From positions 124,001 through 188,000 of IMG/VR virus record IMGVR_UViG_3300028558_000791: a DNA stretch of 64,000 nucleotides. One strand, given 5' to 3'. This document shows positions 7,170 through 52,731 of this stretch, one piece after another (position 1 is the first letter of the stretch; every line of letters starts with the position of its first letter). Made by a program: the position numbers and the translations under genes. The notes under the pieces are model-generated. The model was not told the origin of the DNA, did not search any database, and worked only from the letters and a program-made list of their open reading frames with translations.

Positions 7170-7202
7170 GAGGGTAGGCTGAGATGTGTTATATTCATTA
7201 GT

Positions 7203-7673
7203 GTGAATAACGTAATCTTCATCGAGTTTTACAGCAAACAAAACTTTCCGCCTGGCAAATGGTTGAATGAACCTGATCTTTGTTTTTGGGACCATGGACT
7301 GCCCTGTTTAGCAATTCGAGATATGGGGATGGGTGTATGGAAGGGATTCGTAGCAGTAGATGAGGGTCATCTTCTTTACGGCAAGCCTGTTGATGAAATA
7401 ATTAAGCACCCCGCAATGATGGATGCTTTTCTATCTGTGTACGGCGGCTTTAGCGGAGCGGGACGCTTACCTGTTAAGTATAAAGAGTTTGCTAAGAATT
7501 ATTGGTGGATTGGTATTGAAACTTCACAAGGTGGAGACTTGATGCCTTTACTGAAGCTAGATAATAGTGATCCCAATATGGCTAAAATGATATCAACGCA
7601 GACCTATAAAGACTTTTCGTTTATTCGAAAAGAAACTAACAAGTTGGCGAAATTGATATCGAAACTAAAATGA
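7203..7673 (+). CDS. hypothetical protein
   Basis: GTG start 9 nt after a GTTATA motif; 156 aa. Confidence 0.7.
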   Translation: MNNVIFIEFYSKQNFPPGKWLNEPDLCFWDHGLPCLAIRDMGMGVWKGFVAVDEGHLLYGKPVDEIIKHPAMMDAFLSVYGGFSGAGRLPVKYKEFAKNYWWIGIETSQGGDLMPLLKLDNSDPNMAKMISTQTYKDFSFIRKETNKLAKLISKLK

Positions 7674-7757
7674 CCATGACTGGATTTATGATAATAGATG
7701 TCCTTCTAACGATTGGACTCTTCTGTAATTTGTGCAAAGATACCTATCGGTGATTTA

Positions 7758-8066
7758 ATGAGTAAGACACCTGTGACTGGTGCCACCCCGCGCTATCGAA
7801 TTGAGAGCGTGAAGGGACAATATTTTGATGTGTTCGCTAAAAAAGCCAACGCTATCAAAGCCGCCATCGGTATGGCAGTAGAATACCCTGGCCAAACATT
7901 TCTTGTTGTCAAAACGACCTTGCTCAAGCAAAAGGTCGTTTTTCGTTTCAAAGTTGAAACGGAATTCCAATTCGATGACTTGCAAGATGTTTATCGTGGG
8001 ATCATTGAAGTTTACCAACAGAAGCTAGATAAAACTAAGTATTGGAGAAAGCCAGATGTTACTTGA
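7758..8066 (+). CDS. hypothetical protein
   Basis: ATG at 7758 with GGTG SD, in frame with the listed ORF. Confidence 0.65.
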   Translation: MSKTPVTGATPRYRIESVKGQYFDVFAKKANAIKAAIGMAVEYPGQTFLVVKTTLLKQKVVFRFKVETEFQFDDLQDVYRGIIEVYQQKLDKTKYWRKPDVT

Positions 8067-8547
8067 GATTGCCTTGATGGGCGGATTGCTTTCCATCCTA
8101 GTGTTCATCCATTTCTTTGTGGACTGGATTTTCCAGTCTCATGCAGAGGCTATGGTCAAACACAACAACCCCAAGATCCGCGCCAAACATTGCGCAATCT
8201 ATACGGTAGGCTTCCTCCCATTCATCGCCCTCTTCCACCTTAGCTGGGTGGAGTGGCTCGTGGCCCTCAACATTCTGTTCTGGTCTCACTTCGGTGAGGA
8301 TACCTACGTTCCAGTCTTCCTGTGGGCAAAATACATTCGTAAGCCACCGGAGATGACTGAACCTCGTAAACAGACTGGTATCGACGGATACGTTAGCATT
8401 CTTCCACCTGACCCTAAAGCAGGGTTTGTTGATTTCATTCAAACCCCAATGGGCAAGATTCTAATGATTGCCATTGACCAAATCATCCATATCTGTTTCC
8501 TTCTTCCTATTGCCTGGATGCTGATGCTCCATGTAATTGAGCAATGA
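8056..8547 (+). CDS. DUF3307-like membrane protein
   Basis: HFFVDWIFQS, H..IY, SHF.ED, DQIIH; hydrophobic segments. Confidence 0.75.
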   Translation: MLLEIALMGGLLSILVFIHFFVDWIFQSHAEAMVKHNNPKIRAKHCAIYTVGFLPFIALFHLSWVEWLVALNILFWSHFGEDTYVPVFLWAKYIRKPPEMTEPRKQTGIDGYVSILPPDPKAGFVDFIQTPMGKILMIAIDQIIHICFLLPIAWMLMLHVIEQ

Positions 8548-8569
8548 CTAACCTGAGAGGCACTAACTA

Positions 8570-51445: not shown

Positions 51446-51454
51446 TAGGGAGAT

Positions 51455-51530
51455 GTCCCCGTGGTATAAAGGATGTGCCCTAGTTTCCTAAACTGGTGTT
51501 ATGTTGGTTCGAGTCCAACCGGGGATACCA
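51455..51530 (+). tRNA. tRNA-Arg(CCU)
   Basis: GTCCCCG/CGGGGAT acceptor, CTAGT-TT-CCT-AA-ACTGG arm, CCA. Confidence 0.88.
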
Positions 51531-51531
51531 T

Positions 51532-51975
51532 ATGAGTAAAGATAAAAACTTAGAGAGATTAGTTAATTTAGTTCAACTTAGGCTACAAAGCAGGGGCAAA
51601 GCAAAAGCTAACGACCCTCTTGGTAATGTTGTTTATGTAGACTGTGATATCTACAATAAAGAAATGCTAGAAGCATTTCTTGAATTATCAGTTTCTAGTT
51701 TCAATCAAGTTCCTTCTTTTACCAACTTTACTTTAGCAGATGATTCTTTTGTAGATTGTTTCGCTGAGGTATTAGTTGAGGGCGCGACTATTTATGCACT
51801 TTCTTCTCAAGCATTGATTGAAAGAGGAAGAGAGTTTCAGATAGTTGACCAGGGTATTTCATTTGATCCGCCAACTGTATCTGATATGTTGAATACCCAG
51901 TACTCAACTTTATTGGCCCATCATTGGGAAAAACTAAAGACTATCAAAGCTCGCATCAACGAGTTCAAGAAGTAA
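51532..51975 (+). CDS. hypothetical protein, possibly virion neck/connector-like
   Basis: ATG 1 nt after the tRNA CCA; the listed start at 51496 is inside the tRNA; function is a guess. Confidence 0.6.
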   Translation: MSKDKNLERLVNLVQLRLQSRGKAKANDPLGNVVYVDCDIYNKEMLEAFLELSVSSFNQVPSFTNFTLADDSFVDCFAEVLVEGATIYALSSQALIERGREFQIVDQGISFDPPTVSDMLNTQYSTLLAHHWEKLKTIKARINEFKK

Positions 51976-51993
51976 CTCGATATATATTCCGTT

Positions 51994-52731
51994 ATGAAGA
52001 ACGGAATTATCCTGGCCGGTGGTACTGGCTCCAGATTGTTGCCTCTAACGCATGTTGTCAATAAACATTTGTTAGGTGTCAACGGAAAATTCATTATCGA
52101 TTATCCGATCGAAACCCTAAAGAAAATGGGCTGCCAGGACGTAACTGTCATTTTAGGCGGCAACCATTACGCTCAAGTTGCGGGTTATCTCGGAGATGGT
52201 AGCCGATATGGCTTGAATCTCAACTACGTGTACCAGAGCGAGCCAAAAGGCATCGCCCACGCTATCAGTTTGTGTAAGAGATTCGTCTATGATGACTCCG
52301 ACTTCTCAGTAATTTTAGGCGACAACATCTTTGAGAATACTCCAATCTGGTCTAATCCAGATTGGAAGACTAACCCAAGAGCACAGATTCTATTATCGCA
52401 CCACCGAGAGCTAAAACGTTTCGGAGTTTGCTCTATTGATGAGGATGGTTCCATTGCTAAAATTGAAGAGAAGCCTCAAGAACTGGATCCTAACTACAAG
52501 AATTTGGCTATCTCTGGCTGTTATCTATTTACGCCACAGTATTTCGAATATTTTGAAAGATTGAAACCAAGTGCTCGTGGTGAGTACGAGATTACAGATA
52601 TCATCCGCCACTATCTGGCAGATGGTAATCTATCCTACTCTAAAATCGGTGGGCTATGGTCTGATGCAGGAACCCATGAGTCTATTGCCTTTGTAAACAA
52701 TTACTTCTATACTAAGTCCCGGAATCAATGA
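51994..52731 (+). CDS. sugar-1-phosphate nucleotidyltransferase (RmlA/SpsI-like)
   Basis: GIILAGGTGSRL.PLT...NKHL, LGDN, EEKP, PSARGEYEITD, WSDAGT. Confidence 0.92.
   Translation: MKNGIILAGGTGSRLLPLTHVVNKHLLGVNGKFIIDYPIETLKKMGCQDVTVILGGNHYAQVAGYLGDGSRYGLNLNYVYQSEPKGIAHAISLCKRFVYDDSDFSVILGDNIFENTPIWSNPDWKTNPRAQILLSHHRELKRFGVCSIDEDGSIAKIEEKPQELDPNYKNLAISGCYLFTPQYFEYFERLKPSARGEYEITDIIRHYLADGNLSYSKIGGLWSDAGTHESIAFVNNYFYTKSRNQ

What the first reader, a model, noticed from the sequence alone, without database searches (positions are those of the whole stretch)
7188..51996. Recurring GWTATA-N8/9-ATG motif: phage-specific promoter for leaderless genes
Seen: GATATA or GTTATA lies 8-9 nt before SD-less starts at 7203, 13054, 28107, 32645, 44084, 47154, 49286 and 51994 (11 nt at 28844). 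It also occurs further upstream of SD-led genes (near 4825, 11887, 49000, 52730, 55195, and on the minus strand before 42965). I see no consistent -35 element. The spacing places +1 at or next to the ATG. Inference: a -10-only promoter class read by a phage sigma factor or activator, distinct from the TTGACN host-type promoters. It independently supports the 47154 start of the amber-interrupted gene.
Basis: partly seen in the sequence, partly recalled or inferred. Interest (0 to 1): 0.6.

Follow-up and report, generated by a model that had tools for sequence, protein, structure and literature searches.

The report
Promoter motif giving leaderless phage genes
A short DNA word (TGATATA-like) recurs in front of genes of this 480-kb uncultured phage and its relatives. 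It is most likely a promoter without a -35 box, and where it lies 8-9 bases before an ATG the messenger should start at the start codon; the kind is known, but it had not been described for this group of huge phages.

Summary
Every listed site exists at the stated spacing. GATATA-N8/9-ATG occurs 7 times in the window against 1.6 expected, and 0 of 100 shuffles reach 7. Bare GWTATA is not enriched overall (54 vs 70); the signal is positional.

The window is part of a 480,838-bp IMG/VR phage record whose closest cultured relative is Bacillus phage G. GATATA is the first or second most enriched hexamer within 60 nt upstream of genes in four related genomes. It is strand-specific, lacks a -35 and peaks 8-9 nt before start codons. 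It is conserved before orthologues in about 40 related contigs; where it is lost or lies further away, a Shine-Dalgarno sequence appears.

The consensus t-G-A-T-A-T-A-t-a is better read as an extended -10 (G at -14). This places +1 on the A of the ATG.

No RNA data exist, so start sites and the reading factor remain inferred. One sigma factor is 71-94% conserved in every clade member tested and absent from phage G; it is my favoured reader, not a shown one.

Verdict: a new member of a known kind, of moderate interest.

The parts
7188..7193 (+). GTTATA, 9 nt before GTG 7203 (156-aa ORF, no SD); leaderless-type site
   Evidence: Conserved with the GTG in G001. PHROG 2164 aligns from residue 31 to profile position 29.
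13040..13045 (+). GATATA, 8 nt before ATG 13054 (348 aa); leaderless-type site
   Evidence: In G001 the motif and N8 are conserved while the spacer sequence differs.
28093..28098 (+). GATATA, 8 nt before ATG 28107 (237 aa); leaderless-type site
   Evidence: Identical in G001, and the same 17-mer occurs in G004.
28827..28832 (+). GATATA, 11 nt before ATG 28844 (200 aa, M10-like metallopeptidase)
32630..32635 (+). GATATA, 9 nt before ATG 32645 (158 aa); leaderless-type site
44069..44074 (+). GTTATA, 9 nt before ATG 44084 (Thg1-like tRNA-His guanylyltransferase); leaderless-type site
   Evidence: The Thg1 profile starts at residue 7 and the PHROG at residue 2. The motif is missing from the aligned upstream region of the G001 orthologue.
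47139..47144 (+). GATATA, 9 nt before ATG 47154, which opens a frame with TAG at codon 5 (47166-47168) and an in-frame ATG at 47187
   Evidence: Motif, ATG and TAG are conserved in G001. In G003 the motif is followed by an SD and an ATG before the same TAG.
49271..49276 (+). GATATA, 9 nt before ATG 49286 (56 aa), just after the second tRNA with anticodon CTA
   Evidence: conserved in G001
51979..51984 (+). GATATA, 9 nt before ATG 51994 (nucleotidyl transferase); leaderless-type site
   Evidence: The NTP_transferase profile starts at residue 4. The 18-mer is identical in G001.
42976..42981 (-). GTTATA, 10 nt before ATG 42965 (family-2 glycosyltransferase)
   Evidence: Glycos_transf_2 profile position 1 aligns to residue 4 counted from ATG 42965. 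G001 has GATATA-N9-ATG here.
4825..4830 (+). GATATA, 18 nt before SD-led ATG 4849 (DUF2201 metallopeptidase/VWA protein); leadered site
   Evidence: conserved in G001
11887..11892 (+). GATATA, 30 nt before SD-led ATG 11923 (adenylosuccinate synthetase); leadered site
   Evidence: not conserved in G001
18797..18802 (+). GTTATA, 27 nt before SD-led ATG 18830 (AAA ATPase); leadered site
   Evidence: conserved in G001
48999..49004 (+). GATATA, directly after the first tRNA-CTA and 18 nt before the SD-led ATG 49023 of a 49-aa ORF
50795..50800 (+). GATATA, 15 nt before GTG 50816 of the IF3 homologue ORF; overlaps a TTGACA-N18-TACAAT match
52730..52735 (+). GATATA, 37 nt before SD-led ATG 52773 (RmlD-like reductase); leadered site
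   Evidence: conserved in G001
55195..55200 (+). GTTATA, 21 nt before ATG 55222 (116 aa); leadered site
37393..37398 (-). GATATA, 16 nt before ATG 37376 (113 aa); leadered site
45036..45063 (+). Full host-type promoter TTGACA-N16-TATAAT before the tRNA-Thr cluster. The GTTATA at 45056-45061 supplies G(-14), T(-13) and TATA(-12 to -9). This fixes the register of the motif.

Best explanation
GWTATA is the core of a promoter without a -35 element. Its fuller consensus is t-G-A/T-T-A-T-A-t-a, which reads as an extended -10: G at -14 and TATA at -12 to -9.

Bacterial RNA polymerase uses it to start transcription inside the long same-strand gene arrays of this roughly 420-480-kb phage and its relatives.
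- About a quarter to a third of the sites lie 8-9 (up to 11) nt before an ATG. Transcription then starts on or within 1-3 nt of the start codon. The mRNA is leaderless, has no room for a Shine-Dalgarno sequence, and must be translated by direct binding of the ribosome to the 5' AUG.
- The other sites lie 13-60 nt upstream and give ordinary SD-led mRNAs.

Shown: the motif, its position, its strand bias, its conservation, the lack of a -35, and the correctness of eight of the start codons.

Inferred: that it is a promoter, where +1 lies, and who reads it.

The host primary sigma comes next, at about 0.4.
For: 1. Unbiased enrichment. GATATA is the first or second most enriched of all hexamers within 60 nt upstream of genes:
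- G000: 38 observed vs 6.1 expected
- G003: 49 vs 10.1; G002: 41 vs 8.7
- Within 70 nt, G000 40 vs 7.3 and G001 48 vs 9.5

2. Spacing. GATATA is the commonest of all 4096 hexamers at a spacer of 8-11 nt: 29 cases in G000 plus G001, against 19 for the SD word TAAGGA.

3. Specificity. Single-base variants are not enriched except GTTATA. GATATT is 15 vs 16.3 and GATAAA shows no peak. Generic TANNNT and TATAAT have no peak at that offset.

4. Strand bias in same-direction intergenic DNA: 59:23 in G000 and 60:18 in G001 (p = 9e-5 and 2e-6).

5. Avoidance inside genes. On the antisense strand the observed/expected ratio is 0.46-0.47 in G000 and G001, the 1st-2nd percentile of hexamers; avoidance is weaker in G002 and G003 (0.59-0.63, 8th-9th percentile).

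6. No -35. Logos and k-mer tests on 260 sites show only mild AT-richness upstream.

7. Conservation.
- 37 orthologue pairs carry the motif in both G000 and G001, against 9.6 expected.
- Motif columns are 87% identical; flanks are 73%.
- Before a 729-aa gene, GATATAta is kept 9-13 nt before the ATG in about 30 of 39 contigs with 50-90% protein identity, while the flanks diverge.
- The four contigs without the motif, and the three with it further upstream, show purine-rich SD-like runs instead.

8. SD relation. Genes with the motif at N8-9 have a core SD in 0-20% of cases. Genes with it at 13 nt or more have one in 44-68%. The figure for genes without the motif is 37-46%.

9. True starts. Thg1, NTP_transferase, RuvC, GIY-YIG, a Rossmann FAD oxidoreductase, a GT2 and a GT4 glycosyltransferase and a PHROG family all align from residues 2-13 of the motif-adjacent ATG. 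33 of 36 such starts are ATG.

10. Register. The same GTTATA sits in a perfect TTGACA-N16-TATAAT promoter before a tRNA gene, which cannot be a ribosome site. The A of the box then lies 11-12 nt before the start codon, the published signature of leaderless genes (PMC3160421).

11. Reader.
- One sigma-70 family protein has regions 2 and 4.
- It is 94, 74 and 76% identical in G001-G003 and 71-93% in G004-G007. The 729-aa protein is only 50-62% identical in those of G002-G007 that are listed.
- It is absent from Bacillus phage G, which also lacks the motif excess.
- No phage RNA polymerase was found.
Against: - There are no RNA data of any kind. Only two rhizosphere DNA runs hold this sequence, so no 5' end is mapped.
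- T at -7, the hallmark of primary-sigma -10 boxes, is present in only 22-41% of sites. The element is therefore not a textbook -10.
- A two-domain sigma with a region 4 would normally also read a -35, and none is seen.
- Before the 729-aa gene the spacer is 9-13 nt. This implies a 1-4-nt leader rather than a strictly leaderless mRNA.
- Two leaderless-type sites use GTG (the orthologous G000/G001 pair at window 7203) and one uses TTG; both are poor leaderless start codons.
- The G000/G001 footprint is modest because the flanks are themselves 73% identical.
- Orthologous sites are not independent counts.
- Few sites follow a terminator: 4 of 62.
- Gene starts come from a crude caller.
Confidence: 0.72

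Rival explanations
1. It is the same promoter, but the host's primary sigma factor reads it unaided as an ordinary extended -10 (TGnTATAAT-like) promoter. The phage sigma serves something else, for example the CCCAT-type motif of the high-GC arm.
For: - The consensus t-G-n-T-A-T-A fits TGnTATA.
- The same core occurs in a canonical -35/-10 promoter at 45036-45063.
- The closest cultured relative is a Bacillus phage. In Firmicutes, leaderless genes show a TG peak before the -10 box (PMC3160421).
- Motif-led genes span replication, metabolism and the portal gene, so they are not one obvious temporal class.
Against: - T at -7 is not conserved, and the last two positions read T-A rather than A-T.
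- TATAAT and TANNNT show no peak at the leaderless offset.
- The exact word GATATA is kept in genomes of 32-43% GC, together with a 71-94% identical phage sigma. The high-GC-arm motif differs between G000 and G003, so the conserved sigma pairs better with the conserved motif.
Confidence: 0.3
2. The motif acts in the RNA as a ribosome-binding or translation-enhancing element that does not use a Shine-Dalgarno sequence. It sits where an SD would, and does not act in the DNA as a promoter.
For: - A spacer of 8-11 nt lies within the published 5-13 nt span of SD positions (PMC3160421).
- These genes have no SD.
- The phage encodes IF3 and IF1 homologues that could alter initiation.
Against: - Two thirds of the sites lie 13-60 nt upstream with a normal SD in between.
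- One site lies before a tRNA gene inside a -35/-10 promoter.
- In relatives the motif moves upstream and an SD appears.
- The word is avoided on the antisense strand of genes, which fits a DNA signal.
Confidence: 0.06
3. It is a site for another sequence-specific factor. Candidates are an RNA-processing enzyme that cuts polycistronic transcripts just before the start codon, or a DNA-binding regulator.
For: - Most sites lie in very short gaps inside same-strand gene arrays, without an upstream terminator. Read-through transcripts that need processing are therefore plausible.
Against: - No known nuclease or regulator has this site; a paper search for GATATA together with phage, promoter and sigma factor found nothing.
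- The TATA core, the G at -14 and the 11-12-nt offset to the ATG are what a -10 element predicts.
- There is no dyad symmetry or second half-site.
Confidence: 0.06
4. It is a chance pattern in AT-rich intergenic DNA.
For: - The bare hexamer is not over-represented in the window.
Against: - 0 of 100 shuffles reach the observed count of the composite pattern.
- It ranks first or second among hexamers in four genomes.
- It shows strand bias, a spacing peak (p about 1e-8 in three genomes) and conservation in about 40 contigs.
Confidence: 0.01

Closest known systems
Extended -10 (TGnTATAAT) promoters of sigma-70 family holoenzymes
   Same: G at -14 (T at -15 in 64% of the leaderless-type sites), T-A-T-A at -12 to -9, and no need for a -35. 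The core is shared with a canonical promoter at 45036-45063.
   Different: T at -7 is not conserved (22-41%) and positions -8/-7 read T-A/T. W (mostly A) at -13 is specified. TATAAT itself is not enriched.
'TA-led' leaderless genes of bacteria, where a -10 box about 12 nt before the start codon marks a leaderless mRNA (Zheng et al. 2011, PMC3160421; also Deinococcus-Thermus, PMC12340547)
   Same: [quoted passage not shown] There is no SD, and the starts are ATG.
   Different: Here the signal belongs to a huge phage, uses one nearly invariant word instead of TANNNT, and also serves leadered genes. The only two huge phages found with mapped start sites (phiKZ, AR9) have no leaderless transcripts (PMC8244752 and PMC5312081).
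Single-element phage promoters read by phage sigma factors: T4 late TATAAATA with gp55, and phiEco32 gp36 promoters (recalled from memory, not tested here)
   Same: A single AT-rich element around -10, no -35, and a phage-encoded sigma-family protein in the genome.
   Different: The consensus is TGATATAt/a, not TATAAATA. The sigma here has a region 4 as well as a region 2, unlike gp55. No TSS or biochemical data exist.
Bacillus phage SPO1 late promoters (gp33/gp34; -35 CGTTAGA, -10 GATATT; recalled from memory)
   Same: A GATAT-type -10 word in a phage related to Bacillus phages.
   Different: GATATT is not enriched (15 vs 16.3 and 14 vs 20.8), and there is no -35.
phiKZ and AR9 jumbo-phage promoters read by phage multisubunit RNA polymerases
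   Same: Short AT-rich phage-specific promoter words in very large phages.
   Different: Those phages encode their own polymerases and have 5' UTRs of 26 nt or more. Here no polymerase genes were found, and a third of the sites abut the ATG.

Membership tests
Extended -10 sigma-70-type promoter | TG at -15/-14 directly upstream of the -10 hexamer | tested here: met
   G is fixed by the search. T precedes it in 64% of leaderless-type sites and 40% of leadered sites. TGATAT is itself enriched in G003, 59 vs 18.9.
Extended -10 sigma-70-type promoter | -10 hexamer with A at -11 and T at -7 (TATAAT) | tested here: not met
   A at -11 is invariant, but -7 is A in 37-50% and T in 22-41% of sites. TATAAT and TANNNT are neither enriched nor peaked.
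Extended -10 sigma-70-type promoter | Works without a -35 element | tested here: met
   No conserved column or k-mer lies 8-34 nt upstream of the hexamer in 260 sites from four genomes. The sequence lacks a -35; function was not tested.
Extended -10 sigma-70-type promoter | Transcription starts 6-8 nt downstream of the hexamer | not testable with these tools
   No RNA runs hold this sequence.
Leaderless (TA-led) genes | -10-like box with its second base about 12 nt before the start codon | tested here: met
   Spacers of 8 or 9 nt after GWTATA put that A 11-12 nt before the ATG. The peak has p = 5e-8, 1e-7 and 1e-8 in G000, G001 and G003. Criterion from PMC3160421.
Leaderless (TA-led) genes | No Shine-Dalgarno sequence, and an AUG start that is the true N-terminus | tested here: met
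   A core SD is present in 0-20% of N8-9 genes. 33 of 36 starts are ATG. Eight N-termini are confirmed by family profiles.
Leaderless (TA-led) genes | The mRNA 5' end coincides with the start codon | not testable with these tools
   No transcriptome exists.
T4-type late promoter (gp55/gp33/clamp) | TATAAATA box, read by a sigma with region 2 only | tested here: not met
   The consensus is TGATATAt/a. The only sigma found has region 2 and region 4.
SPO1 late promoter (gp33/34) | -10 GATATT with -35 CGTTAGA | tested here: not met
   GATATT is not enriched and there is no -35.
Promoter of the phage-encoded sigma factor | The phage sigma directs initiation at the motif | not testable with these tools
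   Only co-occurrence is available. The sigma is present at 71-94% identity in G001-G007, which carry the motif. Both are absent from phage G.

The most novel reading that the evidence does not exclude
The conserved two-domain phage sigma factor recognises the single element TGATATA(T/A) without a -35. Together with the phage's own IF3 and IF1 homologues it runs a dedicated expression programme in which dozens of phage genes are made from leaderless mRNAs. The phage would then control both transcription and translation initiation, alongside a second, separately read promoter class (CTCCCATTCAC) in the high-GC arm.
Probability: 0.25. Interest if true: 0.65.

Novelty: new member of a known kind. 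Interest (0 to 1): 0.45.

Why it matters
Nothing is known about how phage-G-like huge phages from soil organise transcription.
- The motif gives a testable promoter map: about 60-75 sites per genome.
- It corrects gene starts that SD-based gene callers would miss.
- It points to a set of leaderless genes in a phage that also carries IF3, IF1, a tmRNA and amber-suppressor tRNAs.
- If the conserved phage sigma reads the motif, the pair would be a compact, portable sigma-promoter system.
- The mechanism itself (a -10-only promoter placed next to the ATG) is already well known in bacteria and in some phages, so this extends known biology rather than adding a new principle.

Tried and rejected
- Near-identity search of 20 kb of the window against 50,697 phage records: no match.
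- Sequencing runs: only two rhizosphere DNA runs and no RNA. I did not use read laying, because contigs cannot show 5' ends.
- Phage-encoded RNA polymerases: Pfam Rpb1, Rpb2 and T7-type families found nothing (the T7-type search had no positive control). A scan for the DxDGD-type catalytic motif found only an unrelated-looking DYDIDG context (DNA-ligase-like from memory, untested).
- Hidden -35 or activator box: logos and 4-6-mer tests upstream of 260 sites were negative.
- Terminator-then-promoter arrangement: only 4 of 62 sites in G000 and 5 of 67 in G001 follow a terminator-like hairpin, so this is not a general feature.
- Bacillus phage G, the closest cultured relative by portal protein (33% identity): no excess of GATATA-N8/9-ATG (10 vs 7 control) and no homologue of the sigma. 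It cannot serve as the model system for this motif.
- G005 and G006, which are 42-48% complete contigs: counts were too low to show enrichment.
- Loose scan for canonical TTGACA-N16-18-TATAAT: 111 hits, mostly noise. It was useful only for a few strong sites.
- Genome-wide scan for TAG-interrupted frames: uninformative, mostly chance TAGs upstream of starts.
- Paper search for GATATA with phage, promoter and sigma factor: nothing found.
- Host identification from the high-GC arm: the genes there look phage-like, not chromosomal.
- One tblastn query read the in-frame amber codon of the 47154 gene as X. No alternative genetic code was used anywhere.

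
Full report
**What the window is**

The window is bases 124,001-188,000 of a single 480,838-bp IMG/VR virus record with 43.4% GC. My crude caller finds 558 genes, 490 of them on the plus strand. No phage record is nearly identical. By portal protein the closest cultured relative is Bacillus phage G, at 33% identity. The only public runs that hold the sequence are two rhizosphere metagenomes, both DNA. No transcript evidence is therefore available, and everything about transcription below is inferred from sequence.

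**Checking the observation**

The bare hexamer GWTATA is not over-represented in the window: 54 found against 69.9 +/- 8.2 expected. The finding therefore rests on position.

- GATATA-N8/9-ATG occurs 7 times against 1.59 +/- 1.16 expected, and no shuffle in 100 reaches 7. Six of the seven open a gene.
- Eight of the 15 GWTATA sites that lie within 70 nt upstream of gene starts in the window have spacers of 8-11 nt, against 0.9 expected (p = 9e-7).

**Unbiased tests on the whole genome**

I did not assume the motif. I ranked all hexamers by enrichment within 60 nt upstream of the 558 gene starts.

- GATATA came first (38 observed, 6.1 expected). GTTATA was also high (20 vs 4.6).
- Among all 4096 hexamers, GATATA is the commonest at a spacer of 8-11 nt, ahead of the Shine-Dalgarno word TAAGGA (29 vs 19 in G000 plus G001).
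- The word is specific. Single-base variants are not enriched except GTTATA. GATATT, GATAAA and GCTATA are at background.
- Intergenic density is 1.49 per kb, against 0.36 (sense) and 0.22 (antisense) inside genes.
- In gaps between same-strand genes the motif points with the genes: 59:23 in G000 and 60:18 in G001 (p = 9e-5 and 2e-6).
- Inside genes it is avoided, most strongly on the antisense strand of G000 and G001. There the observed/expected ratio is 0.46-0.47, the 1st-2nd percentile of hexamers; in G002 and G003 it is 0.59-0.63. Selection against spurious promoters predicts this pattern.

**Relatives**

One protein led to a 359-kb relative, G001, which aligns at about 74% nucleotide identity. 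A 729-aa protein led to 39 loci with 50-90% identity. I fetched G001, G003 (446 kb) and most of G002 (361 kb) whole.

- GATATA is again the first or second most enriched upstream hexamer in G003 and G002 (49 vs 10.1 and 41 vs 8.7); in G001 it is 48 vs 9.5 within 70 nt.
- The 8-9-nt spacing peak recurs: p = 1e-7 in G001, 1e-8 in G003, and 0.016 in G002.
- Between G000 and G001, 37 orthologue pairs carry the motif in both, against 9.6 expected if independent. Many sit at the same offset.
- Motif columns are 87% identical; flanks are 73%.

The clearest footprint is upstream of the 729-aa gene.
- GATATAta is kept 9-13 nt before the ATG in about 30 of 39 contigs, although the surrounding sequence has diverged.
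- In the four contigs that lack the motif, and the three where it lies further upstream, a purine-rich SD-like run stands before the ATG instead.
- At 13040 the motif and its N8 spacing are conserved in G001 while the spacer letters differ.

**Anatomy and register**

A logo of 36 leaderless-type sites gives T (64%) - G - A (81%) - T - A - T - A - T (69%) - A (50%). Nothing is conserved upstream. K-mer tests on 260 sites confirm that there is no -35.

One GTTATA, at 45056, lies in a perfect TTGACA-N16-TATAAT promoter in front of the tRNA-Thr cluster. There the G is -14 and TATA is -12 to -9.

In that register the motif is an extended -10 look-alike. For N8/N9 the A of the ATG is then the 7th-8th base after -7, where polymerase normally starts. 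The second base of the box lies 11-12 nt before the start codon, which is the published signature of leaderless genes in bacteria (PMC3160421).

The difference is small, but the extended -10 reading explains the invariant G.

The element is not a textbook -10. T at -7 is present in only 22-41% of sites. Generic TANNNT or TATAAT shows no peak at this offset.

**Are the N8/N9 genes really SD-less, and are the starts right?**

- A core SD occurs in 0-20% of N8-9 genes and in 44-68% of genes whose motif lies 13 nt or more upstream. For genes without the motif the figure is 37-46%.
- Family profiles begin within a few residues of the motif-adjacent ATG for:
  - Thg1 and NTP_transferase
  - RuvC, GIY-YIG, an FAD oxidoreductase and a GT4 glycosyltransferase
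  - a GT2 glycosyltransferase on the minus strand, at 42965
  - PHROG 4717
- 33 of 36 such starts are ATG. The exceptions include GTG at 7203, which is conserved in G001.

**Who reads it**

- I found no phage RNA polymerase.
- The genome has one sigma-70 family gene of 209 aa, with regions 2 and 4. It belongs to no specific subfamily.
- It is present in all seven clade genomes tested, at 71-94% identity. It is far more conserved than the 729-aa protein in the same genomes.
- It is absent from phage G, which also lacks the motif excess.
- Its own upstream region has no GWTATA. It has a different conserved block.
- This co-occurrence makes the sigma the favoured reader, but it is not proof. A host primary sigma acting on an extended -10 remains plausible.
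- Motif-led genes include the portal, a helicase, UvsX, a PhuZ-like tubulin, RuvC, glycosyltransferases and nucleotide-sugar enzymes. The class is therefore not simply 'late'.

**The 47154 gene**

- GATATA-N9-ATG, the four codons after it and the in-frame TAG are conserved in G001, with synonymous changes around them.
- In G003 the motif is followed by an SD and an ATG two codons before the same TAG.
- This supports a transcript and a translation start upstream of the amber codon.
- It does not separate read-through by the two neighbouring tRNA-CTA genes from a short leader ORF with re-initiation at 47187.

**Comparison with what is known**

- Promoters that have only a -10, and leaderless mRNAs made by a -10 box placed next to the ATG, are well established.
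- The only two huge phages found with mapped start sites, phiKZ and AR9, use their own polymerases and have no leaderless transcripts.
- The motif differs from T4 late and SPO1 late promoters; those consensus sequences are recalled from memory. GATATT is not enriched, there is no -35, and the sigma here has a region 4.
- I file the finding as a new member of a known kind: a clade-specific promoter of extended -10 type, without a -35, that also creates a set of leaderless genes.

**Limits**

- Gene starts come from my own simple caller.
- Orthologous sites are not independent.
- No 5' ends are mapped.
- The host is unknown.

Noticed in passing
G000 about 419,980-478,500 (outside the window), plus G000 4586, 9040, 17350, 22736 and 38113: A second and much sharper promoter-like motif, gCTCCCATTCAC(g)G. 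There are 60 exact copies of CTCCCATTCA, all on the plus strand; 51 fall in the last three 20-kb bins (from 420,001), 39 of them in 420-440 kb. They typically lie about 22 nt before SD-led starts. It is absent from G001-G003. Its reader is unknown. It deserves its own study.
   Followed up: partly
G000 420,001-480,838; G003 about 20,000-125,000 (loci L069-L074): The genome is bipartite in composition. It has a 60-kb arm of 49-55% GC against 39-45% elsewhere. The arm carries phage-like genes (RNA ligase, AAA ATPase, trypsin-like protease) and no upstream GWTATA sites. G003 has a syntenic arm of 47-59% GC. This may be why IMG/VR labels both records 'provirus'.
   Followed up: partly
G003 (loci L068-L090): CCCATC shows extreme strand asymmetry. 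In the 20-140-kb bins that hold the high-GC arm there are about 300 copies on the coding strand and 3 on the other. Both orientations are almost absent from 140-280 kb. In the arm many copies sit 25-30 nt before SD-ATG. It could be the G003 counterpart of the CTCCCATTCAC motif, or it could reflect avoidance of a restriction site.
   Followed up: partly
window 50816-51445 (+); G000 396816-397001 (-): The phage encodes a full-length IF3 homologue (IF3_N and IF3_C) and an IF1 homologue. IF3 is known to discriminate against leaderless mRNAs (from memory), so a phage copy next to leaderless genes is worth testing. The ORF has 43 residues before the N-terminal domain, so its true start is uncertain.
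   Followed up: partly
window 45079-46403, 48924-49255, 51455-51530: Four tRNA-Thr genes, a tmRNA (tag ANDNAFAMAA), two tRNAs with anticodon CTA (amber suppressors) and a tRNA-Arg(CCT). TAG ends only 17 of 558 crude genes, against 313 for TAA and 228 for TGA.
   Followed up: partly
window 47154-47750: The in-frame TAG at codon 5 of a 198-codon gene (no Pfam match; an HD-like FHDCGKP motif seen by eye) is conserved in G001. It is also conserved at the aligned position in G003. This suggests programmed amber read-through or a conserved 3-4-codon leader ORF.
   Followed up: partly
G000 343,200-343,305 (L001 about 1220-1326) and orthologous regions of G001-G003: A conserved block TATCAATAA-N5-7-TATA lies about 40 nt upstream of the sigma gene in four genomes. 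The same TATCAATAA forms the spacer of the tRNA-Thr promoter at window 45044-45052.
   Followed up: no
window 30677 and 45036; G000 49378: A family of strong host-type promoters of the form TTGACACCT...TATA(T/A)T followed by ATGT. These are probably the early promoters.
   Followed up: no
G000 333,719-335,077: A PhuZ-like tubulin homologue (PHROG 4733, E = 2e-8), itself preceded by the motif. No phiKZ-type RNA polymerases were found in the genome.
   Followed up: no
window 35337-35354 (-): One GATATA-N9-ATG match lies inside the gene 35229-35909 on the minus strand. It is probably a chance hit, or possibly an internal promoter.
   Followed up: no
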